From IMG/VR virus record IMGVR_UViG_3300034073_003340, positions 1-64,000 of that record: DNA of 64,000 nt; one strand, 5' to 3'. Position 1 is the stretch's first letter, and every line of letters begins with the position of its first letter. The notes under the pieces were generated by a model. It was not told the origin of the DNA. It was given only the letters and a program-made list of their open reading frames with translations, and made no database searches. This document shows positions 1,642 to 18,910 of this stretch, piece by piece. Both the position numbers and the translations under genes were made by a program.

Positions 1642-4221
1642 TTAGAAGCTCATAGGCATAGGAGCGGATCCTATATCATCCGTGTCACCTATGCTTTTCA
1701 AGTTTTCTTCAATCTGCTCTTCCCAGTCGGCGCAAATCTGTAGTAATCTGACTATCTGTAGGGTTCCCATAACCAAGTCGTCATTTACCCCTATTTTGCC
1801 CTTGTAGGAGCCGCCACCGCGTACAAAGTTCTTGAGCTCCGTGAGTAGTGCTCTACTCTTCAAGGTCATTCTACGGGTCTCTACGAGCGTTTTAAAGCGA
1901 GCACAGGCGGTCATCTTTGTTCTACTATTGGTATTCAGACCTTTTCGACCTTTGCCGCCGCCGCTTTTGCGAGGTTCATGTGTGAAAATGCCTGGAAAGT
2001 TCTCCTCCCCAATATTATCAATATGAACCAGGGCTGCTTCACCCAAGCTGTTGTTTTCAACCGACCAGTAGATCTCTGGATCGCCATCTTGGTCTGGGTG
2101 ATTAGCCAAACTGTGATGGATATAAAGAAGAGCCTTACGAAGAATCTCAACCTGATCTTGCGTTACCGTCTTATTATGTCTCCACTCTGCTACTTGCGTC
2201 AAAGTTGTGAGATCAAATACCTGTATTGCCGAGAAGTCAGATCCGGTTCCCATCGAGGGATCAAGTGTTGCGCCATAAATGTGATTGGGTTGAGGCTCTT
2301 CAAACCAGCGCATTTGGCCAATCTTAAAGATCGGTTCCTGTGGGCTCAAGTTGGCTAATGTGAGTGGATTGATAAGAGTTTCATCCTCAGAAACGAACTT
2401 ACACTCGTATTCTCGCTGGAATTTCTCTTCGCCAAGCTGTTGACGCTGGGTCTGGGCCCAAGCTTCATCTCGGGTTGGATTCTTGTCCCAAGTAATTTCC
2501 AGGGGCTTATAACCATTACGACCCAATCCACCAGGAATTACTTCACCATTGTCGTCAATGTTATTCTTAGCACCAAACCAAATCTCAGCGAACTGATCTT
2601 CGTCGTTGTTTGGAGTAGAAGTGATGATACAGCTACCACCCGTAGACAGGGTTGGCGCAATAGCCGACCAGAACTCAACTGCTTTATTGGGCTGAACGAA
2701 CGCAAACTCGTCCAAGTACAGTAGGGAGATGGAAAGACCACGACCTGCGTCCTTGGACGTAGCTCGTGAAATGATTCTGGAGCCGTTGTCAAACGCAATT
2801 GTGCCCTTGTTGTATTCCACAACACCGCTGCGGAGCCAGTTGTACTGCTCGAGATTCTCATAAGCAAAGCGGATACGATCCATGATCTCTAGAGCAGATA
2901 CGAACTTGTTTGCCGCAATGAGAATCGTGGTATCGGGTTCAAACATTGCCTTCCAAAGAAGGAAACCAGCCGCACAAGTCGTATTGTGAGTTGGCACAAG
3001 AGTTTCACCACAAAGGAACAAATGATCCTCATTGTCTACTTGTAGACAACGAACCGGAACGCTAGTGGTGGACTCAATTGATTTGATATAGATTCTAGAA
3101 TTCTTTGGATGATTCTTACAACGCTTTTGACGTTCTAGTTTTCTTTCCAATTTGAAAATATCAAATAGCGACGTAGTAAATCGAACGGACCAGGCCGTCT
3201 TATAACCAGTTTCCCTGCTAGAAACTGTTGATTTGATACCTAGACTACTCAATAGTAGGCGAACTTTTCGCACCATGTTTTCATCACTCTGATAGAAATT
3301 ACAGGTGCCATTCTTTTCCACTGAACCATCGGTATCCATAAGACCGCGGAGAAGTTCAAGACGATTTTCTACTGAGGTGAAGATATACGAATCAGGTATA
3401 TGCTTATTAGAGATCACTCCCAAGTCACGCAACGCAACTTTGAAACCACCAGCAATATTGAAACTACCAGTCGTGTCACTTCTCTTATCTAGCCTAAACT
3501 GAGACGTTCTGAATCCAGCTTCTTCTACAGCCATCTGGTAAGTGGGAAAGTCATCAATATGACAGGTCACACCAGAAGAATTTCTTCCACCATCCCCAAG
3601 CCAGACTCCAAGCAGGTATGGATCTACAGGAAGCTTGCTATCGCTAAACTCTATAGCGGCACAATGTTTAATATGAACGCTCTGTGTGCTTTCGGGTCCA
3701 TATTTTTTGAGACAGTCAATCAGTTCAAGGGTCGTGATTGTCCTCGTCCTATCCTTTTTTAATGGCAATTCAACAGTCCAGAGATGATCCGCATCAGCAA
3801 TAACAGTCTCGCCATGGCTGAATTCTACCCTATAACAGGGGCGATCGTTCATAGTTTCAGTTATGAACTGAATTCTTGTTGGCTTACCATCAGCACCATA
3901 GATAGTGTCACCCACCCTCAGATCACCCATTGTGGTGAATCCACTAGGTGTCAGTATCGGAGTATCCAATGCCAAGGCTTTTCCCATTTGTCGAGCCGTT
4001 AGGGCAATAGTATAGCGATTCTTATGAAAAGCATCGATCATCTCTTCCTGGTAAGGCCAAAGCTTAAAAGGAACTCGACCTTGGGTGGGATGCTGGATCT
4101 TCACATAATTCTTACAGAAGTAGATAGGGTCAGACATACACTTTCTGAGCTCTTCAATCTGATTTAGATTAAAGCGGTCTTTGCTGTACCCTTTTTTAAT
4201 AATTTCAATATCTTTAGCCAT
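1642..4221 (-). CDS. terL: Terminase large subunit (T4 gp17-like) containing an intein
   Basis: Walker A ARQMGK|T split by the intein, Walker B LLYLDEFAF, ITSTPN coupling motif, and RNase H-like nuclease (LDPSMG, NDDLVM). Confidence 0.95.
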   Translation of the reverse strand: MAKDIEIIKKGYSKDRFNLNQIEELRKCMSDPIYFCKNYVKIQHPTQGRVPFKLWPYQEEMIDAFHKNRYTIALTARQMGKALALDTPILTPSGFTTMGDLRVGDTIYGADGKPTRIQFITETMNDRPCYRVEFSHGETVIADADHLWTVELPLKKDRTRTITTLELIDCLKKYGPESTQSVHIKHCAAIEFSDSKLPVDPYLLGVWLGDGGRNSSGVTCHIDDFPTYQMAVEEAGFRTSQFRLDKRSDTTGSFNIAGGFKVALRDLGVISNKHIPDSYIFTSVENRLELLRGLMDTDGSVEKNGTCNFYQSDENMVRKVRLLLSSLGIKSTVSSRETGYKTAWSVRFTTSLFDIFKLERKLERQKRCKNHPKNSRIYIKSIESTTSVPVRCLQVDNEDHLFLCGETLVPTHNTTCAAGFLLWKAMFEPDTTILIAANKFVSALEIMDRIRFAYENLEQYNWLRSGVVEYNKGTIAFDNGSRIISRATSKDAGRGLSISLLYLDEFAFVQPNKAVEFWSAIAPTLSTGGSCIITSTPNNDEDQFAEIWFGAKNNIDDNGEVIPGGLGRNGYKPLEITWDKNPTRDEAWAQTQRQQLGEEKFQREYECKFVSEDETLINPLTLANLSPQEPIFKIGQMRWFEEPQPNHIYGATLDPSMGTGSDFSAIQVFDLTTLTQVAEWRHNKTVTQDQVEILRKALLYIHHSLANHPDQDGDPEIYWSVENNSLGEAALVHIDNIGEENFPGIFTHEPRKSGGGKGRKGLNTNSRTKMTACARFKTLVETRRMTLKSRALLTELKNFVRGGGSYKGKIGVNDDLVMGTLQIVRLLQICADWEEQIEENLKSIGDTDDIGSAPMPMSF
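2983..3978 (-). mobile_element. Class 3 intein (332 aa) with LAGLIDADG homing endonuclease, in the terminase P-loop
   Basis: Starts ALALDTPILTP (Ala1) and ends PTHN|T. WCT signature: block B DHLW, block F VRCLQV, block G PTHN. LAGLIDADG motifs LLGVWLGDG and LLRGLMDTDG. Confidence 0.93.
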
Positions 4222-7884: not shown

Positions 7885-8319
7885 TCACCTTTTACCAGCT
7901 TGTCTGTAAAGTTGGCGTTCAGTCATGATACGAAACTTTATGCCATTGGATTTACACCAATTATAGGCAGCTTCCCACTTGGCTTCATTTAGCGTGATGG
8001 CATCAATATCCTTTTGCGTTCGAGCAGCTTCTGGGATGCTCTGACTCAAAGGTTTGATCTCAATTATCTCAGCGTGCTTGGCACCAGTTTTGTCGGTGTA
8101 AAGTATAAAGAAGTCTGGGATATAATTGCGAATCTTTCCAGTGAACGGATCCTGATACTGTATCTTAAGAGACTCGCTTGCCCATTGTTCAACATAAGGA
8201 TGTTGGTCGCATAGATTCATAAAGGTCAATTCCCAAGCGGACCTATATGTGATAGGAAGAGTCCCAACGTATTTTTCTGGGTTCTTGGGTTCAAACGTTC
8301 CTTGATTATAAAACGCCAT
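7885..8319 (-). CDS. Head completion nuclease (T4 gp4-like)
   Basis: F-x-PKNPEKY, YRSAWE, WASE, YIPDF and IEIKP motifs. Confidence 0.88.
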   Translation of the reverse strand: MAFYNQGTFEPKNPEKYVGTLPITYRSAWELTFMNLCDQHPYVEQWASESLKIQYQDPFTGKIRNYIPDFFILYTDKTGAKHAEIIEIKPLSQSIPEAARTQKDIDAITLNEAKWEAAYNWCKSNGIKFRIMTERQLYRQAGKR

Positions 8320-9383
8320 TAGAATAGCTTTCCAGGTCTACCAAACAAGGCACCTTTTAAAAGACCTTGGACACCCTGTCTGGCCGCTCCAGTATTACCA
8401 GAGACGATGTTTTTTAAACTAGATGCGGCAGTCTTACCAATAGCAAGACCTCTATTGGCATCATAAGATCCTGCTATTTCGCTGATAATACGACCAGGAC
8501 TACCGAAGCCTTGGCCGGTTATACCACTCAAGAGATTTCTCTGTAAGGTCGCACCAATGGTATCATCTAAACTACGGGTTATAGCATTTGGAGTTGTCGC
8601 CAGACCAGGAGTAATATCTAGATTTGGTAGATCGTTTGGAACGTCCCAATATTGACCAAAATCCAAACCAGCATCCTCAGCAATTTCCTGTGTTATGGGT
8701 TCGGGGTCAGCGTAAACTATTCCCTCAAAATCAATAGACATCTGAATTTCGTTGGTAACGGCACCAACGCTATAATCAAAATCGTCTGGGTTGAAGCTGG
8801 AGATCTTTGGATTGATCAGATCAAATCGTTCCATTACACCATTGTAGAATTGATACACCGAGATATGACTAAAGAAATAGGCGTAGTTCTGCTCTACCAT
8901 TGGGGGTAGAAAACCCCAGCGACCCAGTTCAAAGGACTCGCCAGTTACGATATCATAGACCGTTGATCCACTTGAACCTGCACCGTATATCTTACTATCA
9001 CCATAATAATATTGGTAATATTCAACAAACATATTTCGCAGATCCTGCGAAATGGTATCATGAAATCTAACCTGGAGCGGCTCAAAGTCATGACCGGTTT
9101 GAACAATACGTTTACGATTATACTGATTCAGCGTCTCTTGGCGAAAGGTAACTTTGGGTCGATCAATATTCTTGACAACTAGTCCAATTCCTCTTTCCCA
9201 TCCACTACCACCAGTAGACTCCGGGCGATAGAACTTCATCCAAAAAAGGAATTTGTTCTTGGGAACATTGGCGAATCTAGTTCCGCCCAAACCAAAATTG
9301 TTTGAAGCGTGATGGCTGTCCCCCAACATGAGGGACAGCCCATTAGGATCAGAAGTCCTACCGCCTCTTGAAGTTTCAGTCAC
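8319..9383 (-). CDS. Tail tube-like protein (baseplate tube initiator/gp54-like)
   Basis: PKVTFRQETLNQYNRKRIVQT...F-x-P-x-x-V-x-FHD tube-fold motif, directly downstream of the tail tube gene. Confidence 0.6.
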   Translation of the reverse strand: MTETSRGGRTSDPNGLSLMLGDSHHASNNFGLGGTRFANVPKNKFLFWMKFYRPESTGGSGWERGIGLVVKNIDRPKVTFRQETLNQYNRKRIVQTGHDFEPLQVRFHDTISQDLRNMFVEYYQYYYGDSKIYGAGSSGSTVYDIVTGESFELGRWGFLPPMVEQNYAYFFSHISVYQFYNGVMERFDLINPKISSFNPDDFDYSVGAVTNEIQMSIDFEGIVYADPEPITQEIAEDAGLDFGQYWDVPNDLPNLDITPGLATTPNAITRSLDDTIGATLQRNLLSGITGQGFGSPGRIISEIAGSYDANRGLAIGKTAASSLKNIVSGNTGAARQGVQGLLKGALFGRPGKLF

Positions 9384-9393
9384 TGACTAAACC

Positions 9394-10232
9394 TTATAGA
9401 CGGTTGCCAGGAATCTGCTCAGGAAGCGCGGTCATTAGACCGTTTGCCTGCGTTGCGTTATCAAAACGAACAGTCAACGTAATGGTCTGGAAACCGGATT
9501 CAGCATAGTCCAGATCCATGTAGTCAACGTTCTGTAGGAAGCAACCTTCAAGCGTCCATGTCTCAACGACAGTGTCATTGCCACCGTCCATGGTCTCAAT
9601 AATGGTTACAAACTTATAGTTGATACCAGAAGCAAAAGCCGTCTGCTCAAAGTGGTTGAGCTGCTTCTGTAACTGGTGCCCAACAAGCTTAGCAACGTTG
9701 TTGGTCAAGTCATCCTTGAGAACAATCTGCAAGGTCTCCCACGTATGCTTACCAGCATAGTAGGCGGTGCTGTTGTAACTATGAACAGGAACTTCTTCGT
9801 GGGCAATTTTTGGTTTGCCAACGCTCTGAACCTGCTGGGTGAAGTCGAGACCACCTGCGATTGGACCAAAGTTAACCACGCGGACGCGGAAGCGATACTT
9901 ATACTTGAGTTGGAGAAGACCACCGCGGCCCTGTCCGCCTCCAAGTGGAACCATTTGTATTCAATCAGTGTCGTTAATACTGATCCGCCTTACGGCTGCT
10001 CATTGTTACCAATGAGATTAGACTATATCATGACCCACTTGGGGCCCCACCCGTTTCAGCCCACTTGGGCCTACGACCTTTCGGTCTAGTCGTTGAACGT
10101 TCCGGTTCATAACTCCGGCTTCGCTGCTGATTGTCCCTGAGGGATTTTCCAGCAATTAGAGTGGTTTTTCGACCAGGATCACTCCTGGAAGCAGCTATTC
10201 CTTTAACCGAACTTAGATAGAGTTTCTGCCAT
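9394..10232 (-). CDS. Tail tube protein (T4 gp19-like), spliced: exon 1 10232-10206, exon 2 9951-9394 (194 aa)
   Basis: GGAGG RBS plus ATG GCA GAA ACT CTA TCT AAG TTC GGT (MAETLSKFG) joins in frame to GTT CCA CTT (VPLGGGQGRGGLLQ...KYRFRV). Also YYAGKHTW and W-x-L-x-GCF tube motifs. Confidence 0.92.
9952..10205 (-). mobile_element. Group I intron (subgroup IA-like, 254 nt, no internal ORF)
   Basis: P AATTGCTGGAAA, Q AATCAGCAG, R GTTCAACGACTA, S ATGATATAGTCT. Exon-terminal U pairs with G in P1 (CGGU|UA with UAGCUG). P10 GGAAU pairs with exon 2 GUUCC. P3 CCACTC/GGGTGG. P7.1 GACC-GAAA-GGTC and P7.2 GCCC-AAGT-GGGC. Terminal omega-G. Confidence 0.95.
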
Positions 10233-10329
10233 GACGATATCACCTCCTAGGTAACGATCTATTTTGATTATTTAGCGTTTCAGATTGTAAATAGAAACAA
10301 TTAGAAACTTTTAGAAGATTTGGAGTTCA

Positions 10330-11142
10330 ATGTATTACGTTTATACCTTGTGTGATCCAAGAAGAGATGACCAACCATTTTATGTTGGCAAGGGATCACG
10401 AGACCGATGTAAGTCCCATCTATATGAAACGTATCAGAATACGAGCAATCGCCGCAAGTGGTGTAAGATAGCTGCTATTAAGAAGTCCGGGCTTGAAGTT
10501 ACTATCAAAAAGATTCAAGAGGATTTATCAGAGTCTGATGCTTATGATCTGGAAGAAGAATTAATCAAGAAGTACGGTAGAATAGGCTATGAATCCAATG
10601 GCATCTTAACCAACATATGTGAATCTTCTCGTCCTCCCTCTGCTAAAGGAAGAATGATATCAGATGAAACTCGTAGAAAGCATAGTGAACGCCAAAAAGG
10701 TCCACTAAATCATAGATATGGTATCAAGATGTCAGATGAGGAAAAGGAATATAGGCGTCGATTTAATTTAGAAAATGGTATCAGACCGCCTGATAGGACA
10801 GGGGTTTCCCACACTGAAGAGACCAAAATCAAGATGAGTCTAGCCAGCAAAGGTAAGAAGAAAAGCCCTGAGCATTGTAAGGCGATTGGTGAAGCTCGTC
10901 GTGGAAAATCTCTAGGACCATGTTCCAATGAGAAAGCCAAGAAAATAGCAGAATCACAGTATAGAAACTATCAGCTTACTAGCCCTGAAGGTAAAAATTA
11001 CACAGTGAACACAAGTAAACTAAGAGAGATGATAAAGATATTCAATTGGTCATATGGGGGAATCATGGCAGCTAAAATTGCTGGGAGAAAATATCGAGGT
11101 TGGACTATTTTAGATCTGGGACGATCTAAAATACCAGATTAA
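10330..11142 (+). CDS. Free-standing GIY-YIG-type homing endonuclease with NUMOD3-like repeats
   Basis: YYVY...PFYVGKG...R...H catalytic module and basic GxxxSxETxxKxS repeats. Opposite strand to its neighbours. Confidence 0.85.
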   Translation: MYYVYTLCDPRRDDQPFYVGKGSRDRCKSHLYETYQNTSNRRKWCKIAAIKKSGLEVTIKKIQEDLSESDAYDLEEELIKKYGRIGYESNGILTNICESSRPPSAKGRMISDETRRKHSERQKGPLNHRYGIKMSDEEKEYRRRFNLENGIRPPDRTGVSHTEETKIKMSLASKGKKKSPEHCKAIGEARRGKSLGPCSNEKAKKIAESQYRNYQLTSPEGKNYTVNTSKLREMIKIFNWSYGGIMAAKIAGRKYRGWTILDLGRSKIPD

Positions 11143-12051
11143 CTAGTATTCCTGAACCGCGACGATTTTAGCCTTAGTGGTCAGATATTCCCAAAGAGGA
11201 TCATCAGTTGGTTTCCCAGCCCAATAATTTTCTGCGGCTGTTTTGAGTTCCTGGCTATCATAGTCGTGTCCGTCGTCTACCAGGGAAGATATAAGACTAG
11301 ACCAGTTCATATCATGCTTATAAACAGGCCCTAGAGGTTGTAAGGTGAACACGTATTCAGTTGAGCCTCCCGCCGAATCCAAATCATCTTCATTACTAAC
11401 CATGAAAACCGCATCACGGTGAGAAAGCTTGTCGGCTGGTCGATAGCGTTCTAGAACTTCAAAAAACGGCACATATCCCCAGTCACGATCATAATCACTT
11501 CCTCGACCGGTTAGGATCGTTCCTACGTCTAATTCATTGACGCTGGAGTGATAATAGAGACGAGTATTCAAAGATTCTTCCAGTTGTCCTGGAGTGATAG
11601 ATTTCATAAATTTCAGGAAAGTGGAGGTAGAAATGTTCCAATCTGTGGAATTTTCAACCATTCTTACCAAATTAGGCGCATACAGATCAAAATTAAAAAC
11701 CGCAGACTCAAAATCGTTGTATTCTCGTTCTATCCAATCAGCAATAGAATCATTGGTGACTTTTCCGTCGCCGTCAAACAGAGAACCCCTTACATAAACC
11801 GCAACGTGATAGACTCTAGCATCCGAAGTCAGAATATCTTCTGGCTCAGCTTCATCTCCATCTCCATATACGTCCTCACAGATTACTACTATTCTGGGGA
11901 CCTCACCTTGCTCTTCGAGAATCGTAGCCAAAGCCAAGGCAAATGTCCCACAGTTTCCTGAGAATAGATTACCACTACCAAAATGAGATTGGCAAGAATT
12001 TATCAAACCAACAATATCCAATTTGGATTCAGAGATTTCAGACCAGCGCAT
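11143..12051 (-). CDS. Two-domain protein: papain-like Cys-His-Asp domain plus Arr-like ADP-ribosyltransferase-like domain; probable head-packaged effector
   Basis: NCGTFALAL / YHVAVY / FDGDG in the N-half. LYYHSS...L-x-VGTIL...AVFMV...YW-x-G...WEYL in the C-half. Each domain is preceded by an xxES site. Late promoter upstream. Confidence 0.55.
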   Translation of the reverse strand: MRWSEISESKLDIVGLINSCQSHFGSGNLFSGNCGTFALALATILEEQGEVPRIVVICEDVYGDGDEAEPEDILTSDARVYHVAVYVRGSLFDGDGKVTNDSIADWIEREYNDFESAVFNFDLYAPNLVRMVENSTDWNISTSTFLKFMKSITPGQLEESLNTRLYYHSSVNELDVGTILTGRGSDYDRDWGYVPFFEVLERYRPADKLSHRDAVFMVSNEDDLDSAGGSTEYVFTLQPLGPVYKHDMNWSSLISSLVDDGHDYDSQELKTAAENYWAGKPTDDPLWEYLTTKAKIVAVQEY

Positions 12052-12064
12052 ACATATATTTAGT

Positions 12065-12100
12065 CATGGAAATAGCCCCAGTTTCCCAGGACCATTCCTT
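12065..12100 (-). terminator. Hairpin following the stranded Ro60 3' end (probable original Ro60 terminator)
   Basis: AAT-GGTCCTGG-GAAA-CTGGGGCT-ATT on the minus strand, just after the stranded TAA at 12106. Confidence 0.5.
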
Positions 12101-12105
12101 TTGCC

Positions 12106-12150
12106 TTACTTGCTGAAGAAGTCCGACATGATCTGCGGAGCCGCAGTGTC
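12106..12150 (-). pseudogene. Stranded duplicate of the last 14 codons of Ro60 (DTAAPQIMSDFFSK*)
   Basis: Translates to DTAAPQIMSDFFSK*, versus the current Ro60 end SQDAPQVMSDFFSK*. Same length and recoded codons. Confidence 0.92.
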
Positions 12151-12464
12151 AATAGGCTTTAATCATTTTACCATTTATAGCCATATTTTCAGTTAAGCAA
12201 AAATCTGGATTATTTTTCTGAATCTCTTTCTTCAATTCATCAATTTGCTTCTCTAGAAGCTTGATATGATTTTTCAAAAAAGTGATATCTGATTGTTTTG
12301 CTGGATCGTTTAGCATAGTTTCTCCATTTATATTCTTTGTTTTAGCATAGCAAATATAAATGTATTTTTCAATAAATAGGAGTGGTAAGCCAGAGGGGTC
12401 GGATCCTCTGGCAACCTAGCTTGGAGCAAACAGGCTGTCCCACTTGATATTTATTGGAGCTCAT

Positions 12465-13337
12465 ATGAGTCAGATCTGCGACTATGGCTGTGGTCGTCTT
12501 GCCACAACATTCAAACCCTATTCTAAACGCTGGTGCTGTGAAACATCTCAGAACAAGTGTCCTGCAATCAAGACCAAGCAGAATACCCAACAGGCGATCG
12601 AAGCCCGTAAGCAAGGTGTGAGGAGCAAATACGGGGTAGATAACATCTCACAAATACAAGCCGTTAAGGACAAGAAGATCGCAACTTGCTTGAGCAATTA
12701 CGGTGTTGAGAATCCCAATCAATCTTCAATCATCCGTCAAAAAGCTGAAGCCACTAACCTAGATAGGTATGGTGGAACAAATCCTCGTCATTGTGACAAA
12801 GTTAAGGAGAAAGGACGTCAGACTTGTCTTGAACGTTACGGAGTAGATAACGGAAGCAAGACTGAGCAAGCCAAAACAAAAATATCATCACACAAGCTAG
12901 GTCTCACTGATCAGGAAAAGCTACAGATAGCCAAGAGAAGAGAAGAAACTTGTTTAGAACGCTACGGAGTGAGGAATGTATCTCAGAACGAGAAGATCCA
13001 TTACTCTAAGCTAGTCACGGCCAGGGCCAAAACCTACACCTTTCCCTCAGGACAAATAGCAACGGTACAAGGATATGAACCACAGGTTTTAGATTCGTTA
13101 TTAAAAGCCGGTATTAGAGAGCAGGATATCAAAGTTGGACGTCGCAACGTGCCAACTATTCGCTATCACTATGAGGGCAAGGACAGATTCTATTTTCCTG
13201 ATATCTATATAGCCAGTCACAACTGGATCATTGAGGTCAAGAGTCTTTTTACATTCCGACTTGAACGCGAGAAGAACATGGCAAAAAGAGTAGCCACCAA
13301 AGCTGATGGCTACTCCTTTAGTTTCGTGATACGGTGA
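12465..13337 (+). CDS. Free-standing PD-(D/E)xK endonuclease with N-terminal Cys cluster and five YGVxN repeats (homing-type)
   Basis: CDYGCG...CC...CP; KYGVDN/NYGVEN/RYGGTN/RYGVDN/RYGVRN; YFPDIYI...IIEVKS. GGAG RBS before ATG 12465. Confidence 0.75.
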   Translation: MSQICDYGCGRLATTFKPYSKRWCCETSQNKCPAIKTKQNTQQAIEARKQGVRSKYGVDNISQIQAVKDKKIATCLSNYGVENPNQSSIIRQKAEATNLDRYGGTNPRHCDKVKEKGRQTCLERYGVDNGSKTEQAKTKISSHKLGLTDQEKLQIAKRREETCLERYGVRNVSQNEKIHYSKLVTARAKTYTFPSGQIATVQGYEPQVLDSLLKAGIREQDIKVGRRNVPTIRYHYEGKDRFYFPDIYIASHNWIIEVKSLFTFRLEREKNMAKRVATKADGYSFSFVIR

Positions 13338-15080
13338 TTACTTCGAGAAGAAATCGCTCATCACCTGGGGAGCATCCTGGCTAAAGCCAACTACGTCCAA
13401 CATACCAGCGTCCTTGGGGTCCGCAATGGTACAGCTGGTCGCAGTCATACCAACCACAACAGACTTAGCAGGGATGCCAGTCTTCTGTCGGTAAGTCTTC
13501 AGAGCCTGAGAAGGAGCCTGACGACCCGCATAGGTCTCGTTGTCCGTGTAGACAGCGAAGTTCTCCACGGGCAGCTTGTTATCAAGCGCCCACTCAAAGG
13601 GTAGCGAGCAGTCCGTGTTACCGAACGGCAGGCCCGAGATCGTGTTGATCACGTCATCCAGTCGCTGACGCGGACTGATCTTCAGGATCGACACCGGACC
13701 AGCATCCTTGACGTTGGCGTTCATGCGACCTCCATAGCCGTAACCATAGCCGCTACGACCACTGCCACCAGTGAATCCAATGAACTCATAAGAGTTCTCG
13801 ACATTCGCCGTGATCAACGCCATAGCCGCCGAAGCGTCACGAGCAGTTAGTCCCGGAATGTTGCCGATGGCAGCACTGCCCATGGACCCCGACACGTCAA
13901 GAGCTAGCAGCGTATTCTTGCCGGTCGGGGCCACATTGCCAAACGAGGCATAAAATGCCTGGTCGAGCGAGTCTACAACGCCGCGAACGACGTTCCAGGA
14001 CAGACTACCCTTGAAACCACGACCCTGACCGTAGGTCTTCATCGCAGCAAGGATAGCAATTGGGTGAACACGAGCCTTGCGAAGAGCCTCACCATCGGAA
14101 AGCTTGGCCTTGACCAGCTTCTCGGCGGCAGACATCGGAGTCAGAAGACCAACACTTGACATCTTGCCCAGGTTACGAATCATCGCAGTCAGCGACATGT
14201 TGGTCAGCAAAGCCTCCCAAACATTGGCATCGTTAAGGAACTGAGTGGGAATCGCCTCACGAGGAAGGTTGTGATCCACAATCAGCTGGATGATCTCCTT
14301 GGCAGAAGTTGCCTTCTTTGCCGCCTCAAATGCGAGAATCTGAGGGTGGAGAACACCAGACACGTCAGAACGGGACAGGCGAACCTCGCTTTCAAGATTT
14401 GCCGAGCCACGAACGTAGTCCGTAGCACCAACATTCGACATTCCACCAACCATCCAACGCAGGACAGCATCACGCGCAACATCGTCCGTCTTGGGGTGAC
14501 CCAGACGAAGCATGTCACGGTGCGACCATCCATCGCGCTGCTGATACTTGATCGCCTGGTTAGCCAGCCGGTCAAGTGGCATCTCTAGATACCAGTTACC
14601 TACTGCTCGACGTAGAGCGCGCCCCCAACCGCGAACGCCGTCCACAAAGGCAGCAAAGTGGAACAGATGGGTTCCAATCCGAGCGACCTTGGGTAGAGCG
14701 TCAAGAGCAGCCTTACGAGTTGCCTCGCTGTCAGCTGCCGATGCTAGAGCCAGAACGAATAGAGCAGGGTCGTTCTTGGGAGCGCGGCCAGAGTCACTGA
14801 TCTCTACCACACGATTTACAACGCGGATGCCATCCTCGTCAATTAGACGCAGGACGTTCTGAGCATTGGACTTGGTCAGCTCGCGCTCACCCACATAGTA
14901 GGTTCCACCCTCGGTTCCGAGGATCAGGAAGCGATCAAGCTGATCCCATGGAGAAACCACGAAGGTGAATCCACCGGCGTTATTCTTGGCCATTTCCGAC
15001 TCACGGCCCGGAATGGGCTGAGTCTGCGGCGTCTGCTTGGAAGCAATGGCACCCATCAGGACGTTCTTGGAATTACTCAT
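13338..15080 (-). CDS. rsr: Ro60/TROVE-vWA RNA-binding protein (Rsr)
   Basis: NNAGGFTF, LDRFLILGTEGGTYY, IKYQQRDGWSHRD, ALDVSGSM (MIDAS), VYTDNET and GMLDVVGF. GAGGAG RBS before ATG 15080. Confidence 0.95.
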   Translation of the reverse strand: MSNSKNVLMGAIASKQTPQTQPIPGRESEMAKNNAGGFTFVVSPWDQLDRFLILGTEGGTYYVGERELTKSNAQNVLRLIDEDGIRVVNRVVEISDSGRAPKNDPALFVLALASAADSEATRKAALDALPKVARIGTHLFHFAAFVDGVRGWGRALRRAVGNWYLEMPLDRLANQAIKYQQRDGWSHRDMLRLGHPKTDDVARDAVLRWMVGGMSNVGATDYVRGSANLESEVRLSRSDVSGVLHPQILAFEAAKKATSAKEIIQLIVDHNLPREAIPTQFLNDANVWEALLTNMSLTAMIRNLGKMSSVGLLTPMSAAEKLVKAKLSDGEALRKARVHPIAILAAMKTYGQGRGFKGSLSWNVVRGVVDSLDQAFYASFGNVAPTGKNTLLALDVSGSMGSAAIGNIPGLTARDASAAMALITANVENSYEFIGFTGGSGRSGYGYGYGGRMNANVKDAGPVSILKISPRQRLDDVINTISGLPFGNTDCSLPFEWALDNKLPVENFAVYTDNETYAGRQAPSQALKTYRQKTGIPAKSVVVGMTATSCTIADPKDAGMLDVVGFSQDAPQVMSDFFSK

Positions 15081-15097
15081 GATCTGTACTCCTCTTT

Positions 15098-15252
15098 TCG
15101 GCTCGTGAAACCCACGAGCAAGGTTGGCCTCTGACATCAAGGCCGGTAGTTCGATCTAGGGAGTGGGGTGACGGCCACTCGGCTCACAGCTTACGCTGTG
15201 ATTGAGAAACGGACGGTTTTCTATAGAAACACAAAGCGGACGGGCTTTGTGA
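15098..15252 (-). ncRNA. Structured RNA immediately upstream of rsr (leader or Y-RNA-like candidate)
   Basis: Six consecutive hairpins in about 155 nt. Three have CCGUC-containing loops and one has a GUAA tetraloop. Confidence 0.5.
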
Positions 15253-16495: not shown

Positions 16496-18910
16496 TTAGT
16501 TAAACAGAGCGCCTAAATCATCACCGGTGGCAACAATGCGAACCGGAATATAGATGAATTCAATTGCCTGAACTGGCTGGATAGCAATATCTACCCATAG
16601 TTCCTGGCGATCAATTCGCTCTGGTGTGTTGTTGGTTTCATCACAAACCACAATGAAGTCGTAAAGACCACGTAGACCTACTAGATCTGCTAGAAAACGC
16701 TCAAAGGTCGTTCTCACAGAATCTCGAGTCTGGAAGTCGTTTGGTTCAAAGAGGAACGGCTTGCTGATGTTATCCAAGTTGTAACGTAGGTAATTGACCA
16801 AACGAGCAACGTTGATGCGATCAAGAGCTGTTTCTAGGCTGTGACGAGTCTTCTGCCCATATACCACCAAACCACGATTTGGAATAAACGCGATTGGGTT
16901 GATCTTATTGGAATACAGAATATCACGCTGACCAGGGTTCAAGATAGCAGCCTTGAATTCACCCTCATCATCAAGATATCCAACGCTAGAGGCATTGTTA
17001 ACAAGACCACGAGTGAAACCAGCAGGAGCCATCCAAGGGTAGCTGATGCTATCATTGTAAGCCAGAGTTCTAAGAGCAATCGTCGACGGTGGGACCATGA
17101 TCTCGTTACCATCAACATTGGTGCTCAGACCCCATGGATAATACATACCAACATATGGGTTGAAAGTGCTGACACCATTTTCAGTGTTACCATTTCCAGC
17201 ATTGTTGGCAAACTCTGTGATTGCCGCGCCAGTTGGCTTCAAGCGGATTGGAGTGTCACCTACAATAAATGCCACTTCCTTCATGTCCGTGTTCAAAGTA
17301 ACCATCTCATCGATTAGTTCAATGTAACCAGGAGCAGCCAGGAGGTTAAAGTAAACCGTTTCTGCACGGATGTCTTCATTTGCGGAAATCGTTGCCGCAA
17401 GCGAGCGGACAATCATCTGACGCTGCGCACGACGTCCAAAGAACGGAACACCATTTGTCTGGAAGCCAGAAACGTTTGACCACTTGCCTTCAGAAGCATT
17501 GTATTGCTTGACGTCGTTGGTAGACGCAGCAAGATCAAACAACTTCATACCTTCAGCATAGTTGAGTGACTCGGTAGTTTCAGCTTCACCAAACGCAATA
17601 CCGTCAATTGGGTCAATGTTGTTTTCAACATTAATAACCTTCCACAAGCCACCGGTTCGACGATACATCTTTGGATAATTTTCCAAATCCGAAGTATCAA
17701 CCCAAAGATCGTTTTCGACCAGTGGAGCACCAGTGGACTGAACCGTTGGTGCCGATCCCAGCAGGATCACACCGTTGGCATCAGTTGCTGGATAAACTGT
17801 GCGGTATGGACGCCATTCTCCGCCTTGGTTAACCTTGACGTTTACTACTAGATTCTGGTTATTGAACCAGAGAGTTCCATCATCGGCTGTGTTGGTTGGC
17901 TCAGTCGCACTAGCTTCTTCCCCAAGAGCTTCCCAAACATCAGTATTTTCGTTATAACGAAGGAACTCAAAAACCGCACGAGTATCTTCATAACTCAAGA
18001 ATACTGAACCAGCAACTCTAGTTAGAGTGTTGACCTTTGACAAGCTGTAGATAGGAACTAGGGTTTCTGCCCAAATGCCAGTTCCGGCATTATAGGTTTT
18101 TAGAAGCCAGGTCGCTGCCGCACTAATGCTGGTAATAACATCAGGGGTATTGAGAACTAGAACGTCGCCAATGTTTCCAGTAGCAGGACGGAAATTGTTG
18201 TATTTTAGTTCCAGAGAAGCCGAAGATCCTTCAGCAACCTTAGCTGTCTTCCATTCTGGTGTTCCTACAACAAACCATTCGTCGGCAATACGCTGATAAA
18301 GAACCTTCTTTGAATACAACACTACCATGGCAAAATCACCATTGGCAGAATCTACCAGAAGAGGAACTTTCTGTCCAGGAATGATTTCAGGAGCCGCGCT
18401 ATCAAGAGAAGACTCATCTTCTACGATCCAAAGATCGCGCTCAGTCCATTCACTACCAGTATATTCGTAAATACCCCAGGTATTGTTTTGCGTATCTAGC
18501 CAGTTCGTGCCATTGGTAGCTTCGGCACGAGGCTCAGAAGCCTGTGGCATCAGCTGCCCATAGTCGATCGCAGCACGAATGACAAACGCACGGTTAGCAA
18601 TACCAAGATACTGGTAAGCAGCATGAAGACCATACTCGTTTAGTTCGTAACCATGAACGGCAGAGCCATTTCTGGTGTAAAAAATTGGGTTGCCAAACGT
18701 CTGGAGGAGTTCGCGCTGGCTCGTGATAGGGTAGAGCTTGTTCGCGTTCTCGGGCAAGGTGCCTTCGGCCACGCCGCTACCCGAAGGCAGAGACTTGAAT
18801 TCGTGCGTGCCGATAATAATCAGCGGAACAGTGCCTTCACCAGCCGTTGCGTAGTTGGATTCGTCGGTTACGGTAACAGATGTACCGGGCGACACTAGAG
18901 GATATACCAT
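16496..18910 (-). CDS. Tail sheath protein (T4 gp18-like)
   Basis: LVSPGTSVTVTDES N-terminus; YPWMAPAGFTRG, INPI, RINVARL, FLFEPND and PVQAIEFIYIP. Confidence 0.95.
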   Translation of the reverse strand: MVYPLVSPGTSVTVTDESNYATAGEGTVPLIIIGTHEFKSLPSGSGVAEGTLPENANKLYPITSQRELLQTFGNPIFYTRNGSAVHGYELNEYGLHAAYQYLGIANRAFVIRAAIDYGQLMPQASEPRAEATNGTNWLDTQNNTWGIYEYTGSEWTERDLWIVEDESSLDSAAPEIIPGQKVPLLVDSANGDFAMVVLYSKKVLYQRIADEWFVVGTPEWKTAKVAEGSSASLELKYNNFRPATGNIGDVLVLNTPDVITSISAAATWLLKTYNAGTGIWAETLVPIYSLSKVNTLTRVAGSVFLSYEDTRAVFEFLRYNENTDVWEALGEEASATEPTNTADDGTLWFNNQNLVVNVKVNQGGEWRPYRTVYPATDANGVILLGSAPTVQSTGAPLVENDLWVDTSDLENYPKMYRRTGGLWKVINVENNIDPIDGIAFGEAETTESLNYAEGMKLFDLAASTNDVKQYNASEGKWSNVSGFQTNGVPFFGRRAQRQMIVRSLAATISANEDIRAETVYFNLLAAPGYIELIDEMVTLNTDMKEVAFIVGDTPIRLKPTGAAITEFANNAGNGNTENGVSTFNPYVGMYYPWGLSTNVDGNEIMVPPSTIALRTLAYNDSISYPWMAPAGFTRGLVNNASSVGYLDDEGEFKAAILNPGQRDILYSNKINPIAFIPNRGLVVYGQKTRHSLETALDRINVARLVNYLRYNLDNISKPFLFEPNDFQTRDSVRTTFERFLADLVGLRGLYDFIVVCDETNNTPERIDRQELWVDIAIQPVQAIEFIYIPVRIVATGDDLGALFN

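What the first reader, a model, noticed from the sequence alone, without database searches (positions are those of the whole stretch)
9394..10232. Hidden ORF-less group IA intron splits the tail tube gene after codon 9
Seen: the ORF caller starts the tube at an intron-internal ATG. The true RBS/ATG is at 10232, followed by 9 codons, an in-frame TAA and a 254-nt intron with complete P/Q/R/S, P1, P3, P7, P7.1, P7.2, P8 and P10 pairings. Splicing gives MAETLSKFG|VPLGGG. Established: most phage group I introns sit in nucleotide-metabolism or replication genes. A high-copy structural protein that depends on self-splicing is unusual.
Basis: seen in the sequence. Interest (0 to 1): 0.7.

Follow-up and report, generated by a model that had tools for sequence, protein, structure and literature searches.

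The report
Self-splicing intron splits phage tail-tube gene
The single tail-tube gene of this 436-kb jumbo phage is interrupted after codon 9 by a 254-nt group I intron, which always occurs next to a separate homing-endonuclease gene and appears to move with it between phages; this is a clear new example of a known kind of selfish element.

Summary
On the minus strand there is an RBS (10247-10243) and an ATG at 10232. Nine codons (MAETLSKFG) end in U at 10206, followed by an in-frame TAA. A 254-nt intron (10205-9952, last base G) follows, then exon 2 (9951-9394). Rfam scores the intron at 85 bits (E 3e-20). Nine natural variants show compensatory changes in 42 of 71 predicted pairs. Intronless orthologues read MAETLSKFGVPLGGG without interruption and are 194 aa long, exactly the predicted spliced product. 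The tube gene is single copy.

An intact GIY-YIG/NUMOD3 homing endonuclease gene (10330-11142, + strand) lies divergently just upstream. It is present in all 10 intron-bearing loci found, but in only 2 of about 77 intronless ones. Two pairs of phages show recombination boundaries 0-23 nt from the intron insertion site. In one pair the endonuclease gene and intron are 100% identical while the flanks are 77-89% identical.

The likely mechanism is self-splicing plus endonuclease-driven "collaborative" homing. Splicing itself was not shown, because no usable RNA data exist. It is not unprecedented: the Twort tail-tube gene has three group I introns, and jumbo phages rich in ORF-less introns are described. 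I rate it a new member of a known kind.

The parts
10243..10247 (-). Shine-Dalgarno GGAGG of the true tube start, 10 nt before the ATG
   Evidence: Read directly. Conserved as GGAG(G/A) in intron-bearing relatives.
10206..10232 (-). Tube exon 1: ATG plus 8 codons (MAETLSKFG). The last base, U at 10206, forms the U.G wobble of P1.
   Evidence: The same peptide is contiguous with VPLGGG in intronless orthologues. The Gly9 codon is GGT in all intron-bearing alleles, against GGC 20, GGT 7, GGA 3 and GGG 2 in intronless ones.
9952..10205 (-). Group I intron, 254 nt, no ORF. It begins with an in-frame UAA and ends with omega-G at 9952. Helices in window coordinates: P10 strand 10201-10197, P1 guide 10197-10192, P2 10188-10173, P3 10164-10159 / 10052-10047, P4 10155-10149 / 10130-10124, P5 10144-10134, P6-6a 10123-10098, P7 10091-10087 / 10025-10021, P7.1 10086-10075, P7.2 10071-10058, P8 10046-10032, P9 10016-9999, P9.1 9996-9987, P9.2 9984-9964.
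   Evidence: Rfam 85.2 bits; covariation; P1, P7 and P10 check; fold z = -3.2.
9394..9951 (-). Tube exon 2: 185 codons plus stop (VPLGGG...PGNRL). Together with exon 1 it gives a 194-aa tail tube protein.
   Evidence: The intronless orthologue P0002 matches PHROG 4542 'tail tube protein' at E 1e-59 from residue 1. It is annotated as tail tube in phages Phosso, Atu_ph07 and PA5oct. It is the only copy in the genome.
10330..11142 (+). Free-standing GIY-YIG + NUMOD3 homing endonuclease gene (270 aa), divergent from the tube gene. Its start lies 124 nt from the intron insertion site.
   Evidence: Pfam PF22945 at 38.8 bits and PF07460 at 31.7 bits; PHROG 314 'homing endonuclease'. Intact homologues (49-80% identity) lie at the same place in every intron-bearing locus.
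11143..12051 (-). 302-aa ORF of unknown function. It is a passenger in the cassette in some lineages only.
   Evidence: Found only in the intron-bearing loci window, L010, L011 and L088 (57% identity). It is absent from L091 and from all intronless loci. It lies inside the 100%-identical block shared by L010 and L011.
9952..12102 (.). Segment that replaces 0.8 kb of unrelated DNA in the near-identical intronless phage L002. Its right edge is the 3' splice site.
   Evidence: blastn of window against L002 gives 99.64% identity from 9951 down to 5000 and nothing upstream until the Ro60-like gene.

Best explanation
The tail-tube gene of this jumbo phage, a relative of Agrobacterium phage Atu_ph07 and Sinorhizobium phage Phosso, is split by a group I (IA-type) ribozyme intron after codon 9.

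Proposed splicing mechanism (inferred, not observed):
- The pre-mRNA folds so that exon-1 bases CGGU plus intron UA pair with the internal guide UAGCUG, forming P1 with a U.G wobble at the splice site.
- An external guanosine attacks after U10206.
- The guide segment GGAAU holds exon 2 (GUUCC) in P10.
- Omega-G at 9952 is exchanged and the exons are ligated, giving mRNA for a 194-aa tube protein that begins MAETLSKFGVPLGGG.
- The in-frame UAA at the first intron codon stops ribosomes from running into the ribozyme.

Proposed mobility mechanism (inferred):
- At the DNA level the intron is one half of a two-part mobile element. The other half is the free-standing GIY-YIG endonuclease gene immediately upstream.
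- The endonuclease most likely cuts intronless tube alleles at or near the conserved KFG|VP site during mixed infection.
- Repair from the donor then copies the endonuclease gene, exon 1 and the intron together, and in some lineages a 302-aa ORF as well.
- The intron interrupts the target site and so protects its own genome. This is 'collaborative homing'.

What is shown: the intron, its structure, the exon junction, the co-occurrence with the endonuclease gene and the recombination boundaries. What is inferred: catalysis, the cleavage site and immunity.
For: Intron and junction:
- Rfam full-length hit, E 3e-20.
- 42 of 71 pairs show compensatory changes across 9 natural variants.
- The guide pairings covary with exon codons. 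In P10, GUUCC:GGAAU (window) becomes UCCC:GGGA (L026) and GUAC:GUAU (L099). In P1, exon TTC changes to TTT with the guide changing G to A in L100.
- Omega-G is present in all variants, and U at -1 in all 10.
- Intronless orthologues are 194 aa and read MAETLSKFGVPLGGG.
- In L026 the intron ends ACG, so there is no internal ATG there.
- The tube gene is single copy.

Mobility:
- All 10 distinct intron-bearing loci carry an intact homologous endonuclease gene upstream. This holds whether loci were sampled from the tube side or from the endonuclease side.
- In the unbiased IMG/VR set, 3 of 3 intron-bearing loci have the endonuclease gene, against 2 of 77 intronless loci. My own Fisher calculation gives about 1e-4.
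- L010 and L011 share a 2.3-kb block at 100% identity: the 303-aa ORF, the endonuclease gene, exon 1, the intron and 23 nt of exon 2. Their flanks are 77-89% identical.
- The window and intronless L002 are 99.64% identical starting exactly at exon-2 base 1. Twelve of the 18 mismatches fall within the 558-nt tube exon 2, and none in the next 1,077 nt. This looks like a co-conversion tract.
- The intron label needs at least 4 gains or losses on the tube tree.
Against: - No spliced RNA was seen. No RNA run holds the tube gene. The runs that were laid gave no joints, and a few contigs cross the splice sites unspliced; these may be DNA.
- P1 is short: 6 pairs, 4 of them with the exon.
- The stop codon sits on P1, so a terminating ribosome could transiently mask the guide.
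- The endonuclease's cleavage site is unknown.
- Two intronless loci (L004, L074) carry intact but more distant endonucleases of the same family at the same place. The endonuclease therefore does not strictly need the intron.
- Higher identity of the intron than of the exons is partly explained by structural constraint.
Confidence: 0.85

Rival explanations
1. The endonuclease mobilises the intron only as a hitch-hiker. It cuts somewhere else, for example in the upstream intergenic region or the neighbouring gene. The intron is dragged along by co-conversion because it lies about 125 nt away, as in T4 mobE trans-homing of the nrdB intron. On this reading the intron does not provide target-site immunity.
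For: Strict linkage and shared recombination blocks fit this reading equally well. L004 and L074 keep an endonuclease of this family without any intron. The left boundary of the exchanged blocks lies 2 kb away in the Ro60-like gene.
Against: In two independent pairs the right-hand boundary falls 0-23 nt from the intron insertion site, as expected if the break is there. No intron-only allele was seen among 10 loci. The insertion site lies in the most conserved N-terminal motif of the family, which is typical of homing-endonuclease targets.
Confidence: 0.2
2. The intron and endonuclease gene are old and inherited vertically. The patchy distribution reflects repeated precise loss rather than gain, so no active homing occurs today.
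For: Identities of intron, endonuclease and tube fall roughly in parallel across lineages, including the distant L026, L099 and L100. This is consistent with long co-residence.
Against: The 100%-identical 2.3-kb block sits in backgrounds that are 77-89% identical. The window and L002 are 99.6% identical yet differ by the whole cassette, with divergent exon 1 and a mismatch gradient in exon 2. Both indicate recent lateral exchange. All endonuclease genes are intact.
Confidence: 0.07
3. The ribozyme is inactive and the tube protein is made from the intron-internal ATG at 9954 as a 186-aa protein lacking the first nine residues. This is how gene callers annotate it.
For: The ATG is in frame, and most variants end ..AAUG. 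Gene callers produce 186-aa proteins for these loci.
Against: - There is no Shine-Dalgarno sequence before 9954.
- L026 ends ..AACG and L100 ends ..UAAG, so those alleles have no ATG there.
- Exon 1 with its own RBS is conserved as an open frame through synonymous and two-step codon changes, such as TCT/AGC for Ser.
- Ribozyme pairings are maintained by compensatory changes.
- The N-terminal motif TLSKFGVP is conserved across the family down to 55% identity.
Confidence: 0.03

Closest known systems
Staphylococcus phage Twort orf142 (tail tube gene) with three self-splicing group I introns (Landthaler & Shub 1999, PMC22036; identified as tail tube in PMC11878797)
   Same: Group I intron(s) of the phage IA type interrupt the tail-tube gene of a myovirus, directly in the sheath-tube module. 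I confirmed three Rfam introns at NC_007021 16606-17506, right after the sheath gene.
   Different: Twort has three introns in a Gram-positive herellevirus. Here there is one intron after codon 9 in a 436-kb proteobacterial-type jumbo phage. The tube proteins and insertion sites are unrelated. No partner free-standing GIY-YIG gene has been described for orf142, and I did not examine that.
Cyanophage S-PM2 psbA ORF-less intron plus adjacent free-standing endonuclease F-CphI: 'collaborative homing' (Zeng, Bonocora & Shub 2009, as summarised in PMC3984707 and PMC6083498)
   Same: [quoted passage not shown] The proposed logic is also shared: the endonuclease targets the intron insertion site and the intron confers immunity.
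   Different: The endonuclease family differs (GIY-YIG/NUMOD3 here, Endo VII-like F-CphI there), as does the host gene (structural tube against psbA). Cleavage at the insertion site is demonstrated for F-CphI and only inferred here.
T4 nrdB intron with defunct I-TevIII, mobilised in trans by neighbouring free-standing mobE (PMC2790892)
   Same: A free-standing endonuclease next to an intron-containing gene drives co-conversion of the intron. The flanking exon sequence is co-converted too.
   Different: The T4 intron still carries a decayed endonuclease ORF, whereas this intron has none. mobE is an HNH enzyme. The host gene is in nucleotide metabolism.
Jug jumbo gut phages: about 18 short ORF-less group I introns per genome and mostly stand-alone homing endonucleases interrupting essential genes (PMC12880540)
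   Same: Jumbo phages with short (about 200-nt) ORF-less group I introns in essential genes and free-standing endonuclease genes. For those phages splicing is supported by metatranscriptomes.
   Different: This genome has a single Rfam-detectable intron. The examples given in the passages I read are terL, nrdD and DNA polymerase; I did not check their tables for tube genes. Those phages belong to a different clade and host.
Phage IA2-type introns (T4 td; Bacillus SPbeta bnrdE, phiNIT1/SPG24; Pseudomonas 201phi2-1 RNA polymerase beta)
   Same: The core is 70-76% identical by blastn. P7.1 and P7.2 lie between P7 and P3', and there is no P5abc. An in-frame stop sits at the start of the intron; I recall the same for T4 td but did not check it here.
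   Different: The host gene and insertion site differ, and this intron has no internal ORF.

Membership tests
Group I intron (Rfam RF00028) | Conserved catalytic core (P3-P8 with the P, Q, R, S elements) matching the family model above its curated threshold | tested here: met
   85.2 bits against a gathering score of 50, model positions 1-253 of 253. Relatives score 82-93 bits.
Group I intron (Rfam RF00028) | Secondary structure supported by covariation in natural variants | tested here: met
   26 of 75 pairs (6 sequences) and 42 of 71 pairs (9 sequences) show double compensatory changes. P7 is invariant, so it is uninformative.
Group I intron (Rfam RF00028) | U at the last exon-1 position forming a U.G wobble in P1 with an internal guide sequence | tested here: met
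   U10206 pairs with G at intron position 11. P1 is CGGU+UA with UAGCUG. GGT is the Gly9 codon in all 10 intron-bearing alleles. The guide covaries with the exon in L100.
Group I intron (Rfam RF00028) | Terminal G (omega-G) and P10 pairing of the guide with exon 2 | tested here: met
   G at 9952, and in every variant. P10 is GGAAU:GUUCC, with compensatory versions in L026 and L099.
Group I intron (Rfam RF00028) | Guanosine-dependent self-splicing | not testable with these tools
   No RNA run holds the gene. Laid contigs gave no joints.
Subgroup IA (phage IA2-like) | Extra hairpins P7.1 and P7.2 between P7 and P3', and no P5abc extension | tested here: met
   Both hairpins are predicted independently and covary. 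P5 is a 4-bp hairpin. No subgroup-specific model was available, so the distinction between IA2 and IA1 was not tested.
GIY-YIG homing endonuclease | GIY-YIG catalytic domain plus a DNA-binding module (NUMOD3), with an intact ORF | tested here: met
   PF22945 at 38.8 bits (cut-off 27) and PF07460 at 31.7 bits (cut-off 20.4). PHROG 314 'homing endonuclease'. All 10 homologues are intact at 255-277 aa.
GIY-YIG homing endonuclease | Sporadic distribution among close relatives and location at boundaries of genetic exchange | tested here: met
   Present in 3 and absent from 75 of 80 related IMG/VR loci, with a more distant homologue in 2. Exchange boundaries are shown.
GIY-YIG homing endonuclease | Site-specific cleavage of the endonuclease-lacking allele | not testable with these tools
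   Needs a biochemical assay.
Collaborative homing pair (ORF-less intron plus free-standing endonuclease) | Intron lacks an ORF, and the endonuclease gene is outside the intron but adjacent | tested here: met
   No ORF is possible in the 254-nt ribozyme. The endonuclease start lies 124 nt from the insertion site.
Collaborative homing pair (ORF-less intron plus free-standing endonuclease) | The two parts are inherited and transferred together | tested here: met
   10 of 10 co-occurrence. A 100%-identical block spans both parts in diverged backgrounds.
Collaborative homing pair (ORF-less intron plus free-standing endonuclease) | The endonuclease target coincides with the intron insertion site, and the intron-containing allele is immune | not testable with these tools
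   Support is indirect only: exchange boundaries lie 0-23 nt from the insertion site in two pairs.
Contractile-tail tube protein (T4 gp19-like, PHROG 4542) | Sequence membership and position in the sheath-tube module | tested here: met
   P0002 matches PHROG 4542 at E 1e-59. Pfam PF06841 is weak on exon 2 alone, E 0.003. Annotated as tail tube in cultured relatives. The sheath gene is at 16496-18910.

The most novel reading that the evidence does not exclude
The locus may be a natural snapshot of the intermediate stage in the origin of mobile introns. On this reading the GIY-YIG endonuclease cuts the conserved KFG|VP codons of the tube gene. The ORF-less ribozyme sits exactly in that target and acts as the immunity half of a two-gene selfish cassette. 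The cassette sometimes carries a 302-aa cargo ORF and is currently spreading among environmental Atu_ph07-like jumbo phages. The extreme 5' position of the intron (codon 9) would then be explained by selection for tight linkage to an endonuclease gene that must stay outside the coding region. Because the invaded gene is a late, high-copy structural one, the endonuclease could also act as a weapon against co-infecting intronless relatives, as shown for the PhiPA3 intron endonuclease.
Probability: 0.5. Interest if true: 0.6.

Novelty: new member of a known kind. Interest (0 to 1): 0.42.

Why it matters
**Annotation.** Gene callers truncate this tube protein to 186 aa (MVPLG...) in this genome and in at least ten related metagenomic contigs. 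The true product is 194 aa, and the nine missing residues belong to the most conserved N-terminal motif of the family.

**Biology.** Assembly of this jumbo phage's tail depends on a ribozyme. The locus also adds a well-documented population-genomic case to the two or three known examples of collaborative homing. It includes intron-plus and intron-minus alleles in phages that are 99.6% identical, and a 100%-identical cassette in diverged backgrounds. Cultured intronless relatives (Atu_ph07, Phosso) would make the homing model directly testable.

**Limit.** It does not open a new category. Tail-tube introns (Twort) and intron-rich jumbo phages are already described.

Tried and rejected
- **RNA evidence.** I searched public runs twice. 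No RNA run holds the tube gene. Laying four runs, including a metatranscriptome, gave no spliced joints. Most laid contigs were unrelated introns sharing the P3-P6 core, with depth peaks at 10040-10160, plus a few contigs crossing the splice sites unspliced. This is uninformative rather than negative.
- **Near-identity search.** megablast of the locus against cultured phages found nothing.
- **Metagenome pattern scan.** An exon-anchored intron pattern returned only the contig already known.
- **First pairwise alignment.** MAFFT of the window against L002 was misleading because the intron has no counterpart there. I replaced it with blastn.
- **Promoter and terminator scan.** The locus gave no more sites than shuffled sequence, so no transcription signals are claimed.
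- **Internal-ATG start.** Considered and rejected as the true start; see the rival explanations.
- **Second tube gene.** Considered and rejected as a way to make splicing dispensable, because the genome has only one copy. The downstream 354-aa tube-like paralogue is also present in intronless phages.
- **Not run.** I did not fold the protein or model an endonuclease-DNA complex, because neither would change the conclusions. I did not run the count of structure pairs, because it needs a long typed structure string; the RNAalifold pair tables serve instead.

Full report
**1. What is in the sequence**

The window is the first 64 kb of a 435,856-bp virus record with direct terminal repeats. The tube protein is 67-78% identical to those of Agrobacterium phage Atu_ph07 and Sinorhizobium phage Phosso, both jumbo phages of 470-490 kb.

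On the minus strand I read the following:
- GGAGG at 10247-10243 and ATG at 10232.
- Nine codons, MAETLSKFG, ending in ggT at 10206.
- An in-frame TAA at 10205-10203.
- A 254-nt stretch ending ..AAAUG at 9952.
- gtt cca ctt gga ggc gga (VPLGGG) from 9951 onwards.

The mechanical ORF list starts the gene at ATG 9954, giving 186 aa. That ATG is the last three bases of the intervening sequence.

**2. It is a group I intron**

- Rfam RF00028 matches 9999-10215(-) over the whole model at 85.2 bits, against a gathering score of 50, with E 2.8e-20. It is the only Rfam hit in the window and the only group I intron in the genome.
- The helices can be written out by hand. P1 is exon CGGU plus intron UA paired with intron UAGCUG, with a U.G wobble at the splice site. 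P10 is intron GGAAU paired with exon-2 GUUCC. The remaining helices are P2, P3, P4, P5, P6/6a, P7 (GACUA/UAGUC), P7.1 (GAAA loop), P7.2, P8, P9 (GUAA loop), P9.1 (GUAA loop) and P9.2, followed by omega-G.
- P7.1 and P7.2 between P7 and P3', together with the absence of P5abc, are the subgroup IA architecture.
- The closest introns in cultured phages are 70-76% identical over the core. They are the Bacillus phiNIT1/SPG24 and SPbeta bnrdE introns, the Pseudomonas 201phi2-1 RNA polymerase intron and the Campylobacter phage introns.
- The minimum free energy is 3.2 SD below shuffles.

**3. Natural variants prove the structure and the splice sites**

I collected the same intron at the same codon position from nine further distinct contigs:
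- L010, L011/L088, L089, L091, L092 and L026.
- L096, L097, L099 and L100.

Tube identity to the window ranges from 91% down to about 60%.

RNAalifold, which knows nothing of group I introns, recovers P1, P2, P3, P4, P5, P6, P6a, P7.1, P7.2, P8, P9, P9.1 and P9.2. Compensatory double changes occur in 26 of 75 pairs with 6 sequences and in 42 of 71 pairs with 9 sequences.

The guide pairings covary with the coding exons:
- P10 is GUUCC:GGAAU in the window, UCCC:GGGA in L026 and GUAC:GUAU in L099.
- In L100 the Phe codon is TTT instead of TTC, and the guide carries A instead of G at the paired position.
- Every variant has U at -1, with Gly9 always GGT. Intronless alleles use GGC 20, GGT 7, GGA 3 and GGG 2.
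- Every variant ends in G.

**4. The spliced product is the real protein**

- Among 580 homologues, the common length is 194 aa, which equals 9 + 185.
- The intronless ones read MAETLSKFGVPLGGG.. without interruption. P0001 is 99% identical to the window's exon 2.
- The motif TLSKFG|VP is the most conserved N-terminal feature of the family, down to 55% identity. The intron therefore sits in a conserved site, as homing targets usually do.
- Exon 1 stays open, with its own RBS, in all intron-bearing relatives. It does so through synonymous and two-step codon changes such as TCT, TCA and AGC for Ser, and CTA, TTA, TTG and CTT for Leu.
- L026 and L100 have no ATG at the intron's 3' end (ACG and AAG). 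The caller's start is therefore an accident of the ..AAUG ending.
- The genome has no second tube gene.
- The intronless orthologue P0002 matches PHROG 4542 'tail tube protein' from residue 1 at E 1e-59.
- The sheath gene lies upstream at 16496-18910.

**5.

A 270-aa GIY-YIG + NUMOD3 protein is encoded at 10330-11142 on the + strand. It runs divergently from the tube gene, and its start is 124 nt from the insertion site.

Co-occurrence with the intron:
- Every intron-bearing locus with upstream sequence has an intact homologue (49-100% identical among themselves) in the same place and orientation.
- Starting from the endonuclease instead, its nearest homologues in a 5.8-billion-protein collection (79, 75, 54 and 49% identity) all sit next to an intron-split tube gene. 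A fifth contig ends too early to tell.
- In the unbiased IMG/VR sample of 80 tube loci, 3 of 3 intron-bearing loci have the endonuclease gene, against 2 of 77 intronless loci.
- Those two, L004 and L074, carry intact but more distant members of the family (34% identity, and 51% over the N-terminal half).
- No intron-only allele was seen.

**6. Footprints of recent lateral transfer**

Pair (a), L010 and L011:
- They have 100% identical introns and endonucleases, but tube exon 2 is only 81% identical at the DNA level.
- The identical block runs from the 3' end of the Ro60-like gene through a 303-aa ORF, the endonuclease gene, exon 1 and the intron.
- It stops 23 nt into exon 2. The flanks are 77-89% identical.

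Pair (b), the window and the intronless contig L002:
- They are 99.64% identical over 4,952 nt, and the alignment begins exactly at exon-2 base 1.
- Twelve of the 18 mismatches lie in the 558-nt exon 2. None lies in the next 1,077 nt. This looks like a co-conversion tract.
- Exon 1 differs at 6 of 27 positions.
- The 2.15 kb upstream of exon 2 in the window (302-aa ORF, endonuclease gene, exon 1 and intron) is replaced in L002 by an unrelated 174-aa ORF.
- Similarity resumes in the Ro60-like gene at 95%.

(c) On a maximum-likelihood tube tree the intron needs at least four gains or losses.

Together these results show that the intron and the endonuclease gene move as one unit between diverged phages, and that one recombination boundary lies at the intron insertion site.

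**7. Mechanism**

Shown:
- A structurally intact, covarying group I ribozyme at a precisely defined site.
- An exon junction that restores the conserved protein.
- Linkage to, and co-transfer with, an intact free-standing endonuclease gene.

Inferred:
- The RNA self-splices. The in-frame UAA at the first intron codon would keep ribosomes out of the ribozyme, as reviewed for phage introns in PMC3984707.
- The endonuclease cuts intronless tube alleles near the KFG|VP codons.
- The intron protects its carrier.

This is the collaborative-homing scheme, described for two phage systems in the review PMC3984707 (F-CphI with the psbA intron being one; see also PMC6083498). It also resembles T4 mobE-driven trans-homing of the nrdB intron (PMC2790892). 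The main open alternative is that the endonuclease cuts elsewhere and the intron merely hitch-hikes.

**8. Novelty**

- A tail-tube gene dependent on group I splicing is not new. Twort orf142, with three introns shown to splice and to skip exons, is the tail-tube gene (PMC11878797, citing Landthaler & Shub 1999). I confirmed three Rfam introns at 16606-17506 of NC_007021, directly after the sheath gene.
- Jumbo phages with many short ORF-less introns in essential genes and stand-alone endonucleases are published, with metatranscriptomic support for splicing (PMC12880540).
- I found no report of introns in Atu_ph07-like phages; the two papers that hold both terms mention introns only for other phages or in their reference lists. 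Atu_ph07 and Phosso themselves are intronless at this site.
- The finding is therefore a new member of a known kind. Its added value is an unusually clear comparative record of intron and endonuclease co-mobility, and a correction to the annotation of this protein family.

**9. Limits**

- There is no RNA or protein evidence.
- Subgroup assignment below IA was not tested.
- The endonuclease target is unknown.
- Some intron-bearing loci were found by searching for truncated tube proteins or for the endonuclease, so frequencies should be taken from the IMG/VR sample only.

Noticed in passing
L085:937-3562 (IMGVR_UViG_3300047476_001516): A phage contig carries an AmoC/PmoC gene (Pfam PF04896, E 8e-101) whose ORF stops at about position 200 of the 245-position profile. 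Four tandem group I introns follow immediately (1530-2561, 94-105 bits each), with a GIY-YIG/NUMOD3 endonuclease gene on the other strand (2753-3562). A fifth intron lies at the locus end (8670-8864). This may be a viral monooxygenase subunit gene split by multiple introns.
   Followed up: partly
window 12103-13385: A DUF7487 ORF (12444-13337, + strand; PHROG 'homing endonuclease') lies between two copies of the 3' end of the Ro60-like gene. Window 12103-12150 is 100% identical to L002 5176-5223, a stretch that also aligns to window 13338-13385. This looks like a second, independent endonuclease insertion with a 48-bp flank duplication. L096 has a DUF7487 gene at the same place.
   Followed up: partly
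window 13338-15140 (-): A 600-aa Ro60-like protein (TROVE plus Ro60 vWA domains, E 2e-40 and 1e-52) is encoded between the sheath and tube genes. It is conserved there in relatives (L002, L091, L096-L099). No Y-RNA-like Rfam hit occurs in the window.
   Followed up: no
window 8319-9383 (-): The 354-aa gene directly downstream of the tube gene is a tube paralogue (PHROG 4542, E 2e-16, over residues 40-228) with a long C-terminal extension. It is present in both intron-bearing and intronless relatives.
   Followed up: partly
window 8296-8334: Six of the 18 mismatches between the window and L002 cluster in 39 nt at the junction of the 354-aa gene and the next ORF (7885-8319). That ORF hits both PHROG 218 'head closure' and Pfam's Tn7 TnsA-like N endonuclease fold. 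The surrounding 4 kb has no other mismatch. This may be another small recombination patch.
   Followed up: no
L004:3203-3907 and L074:1284-1991: Two intronless tube loci carry intact GIY-YIG endonuclease genes of the same family (234 and 235 aa) at the same divergent upstream position. The endonuclease lineage therefore also exists without the intron, either at an earlier stage or after intron loss.
   Followed up: partly
window 10040-10161: In wastewater runs, the P3-P7 core of the intron attracts many unrelated contigs, with summed word depth up to about 18,000. These contigs diverge immediately outside the core. Closely similar IA-type intron cores are evidently very abundant in those samples.
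   Followed up: no
L097:1-48 and L097:5095-5801: The relative L097 has further endonuclease-like genes (a NUMOD3 hit and a GIY-YIG hit) on both sides of the tube module. Homing-endonuclease genes appear to be dense in this region of these jumbo phages.
   Followed up: no
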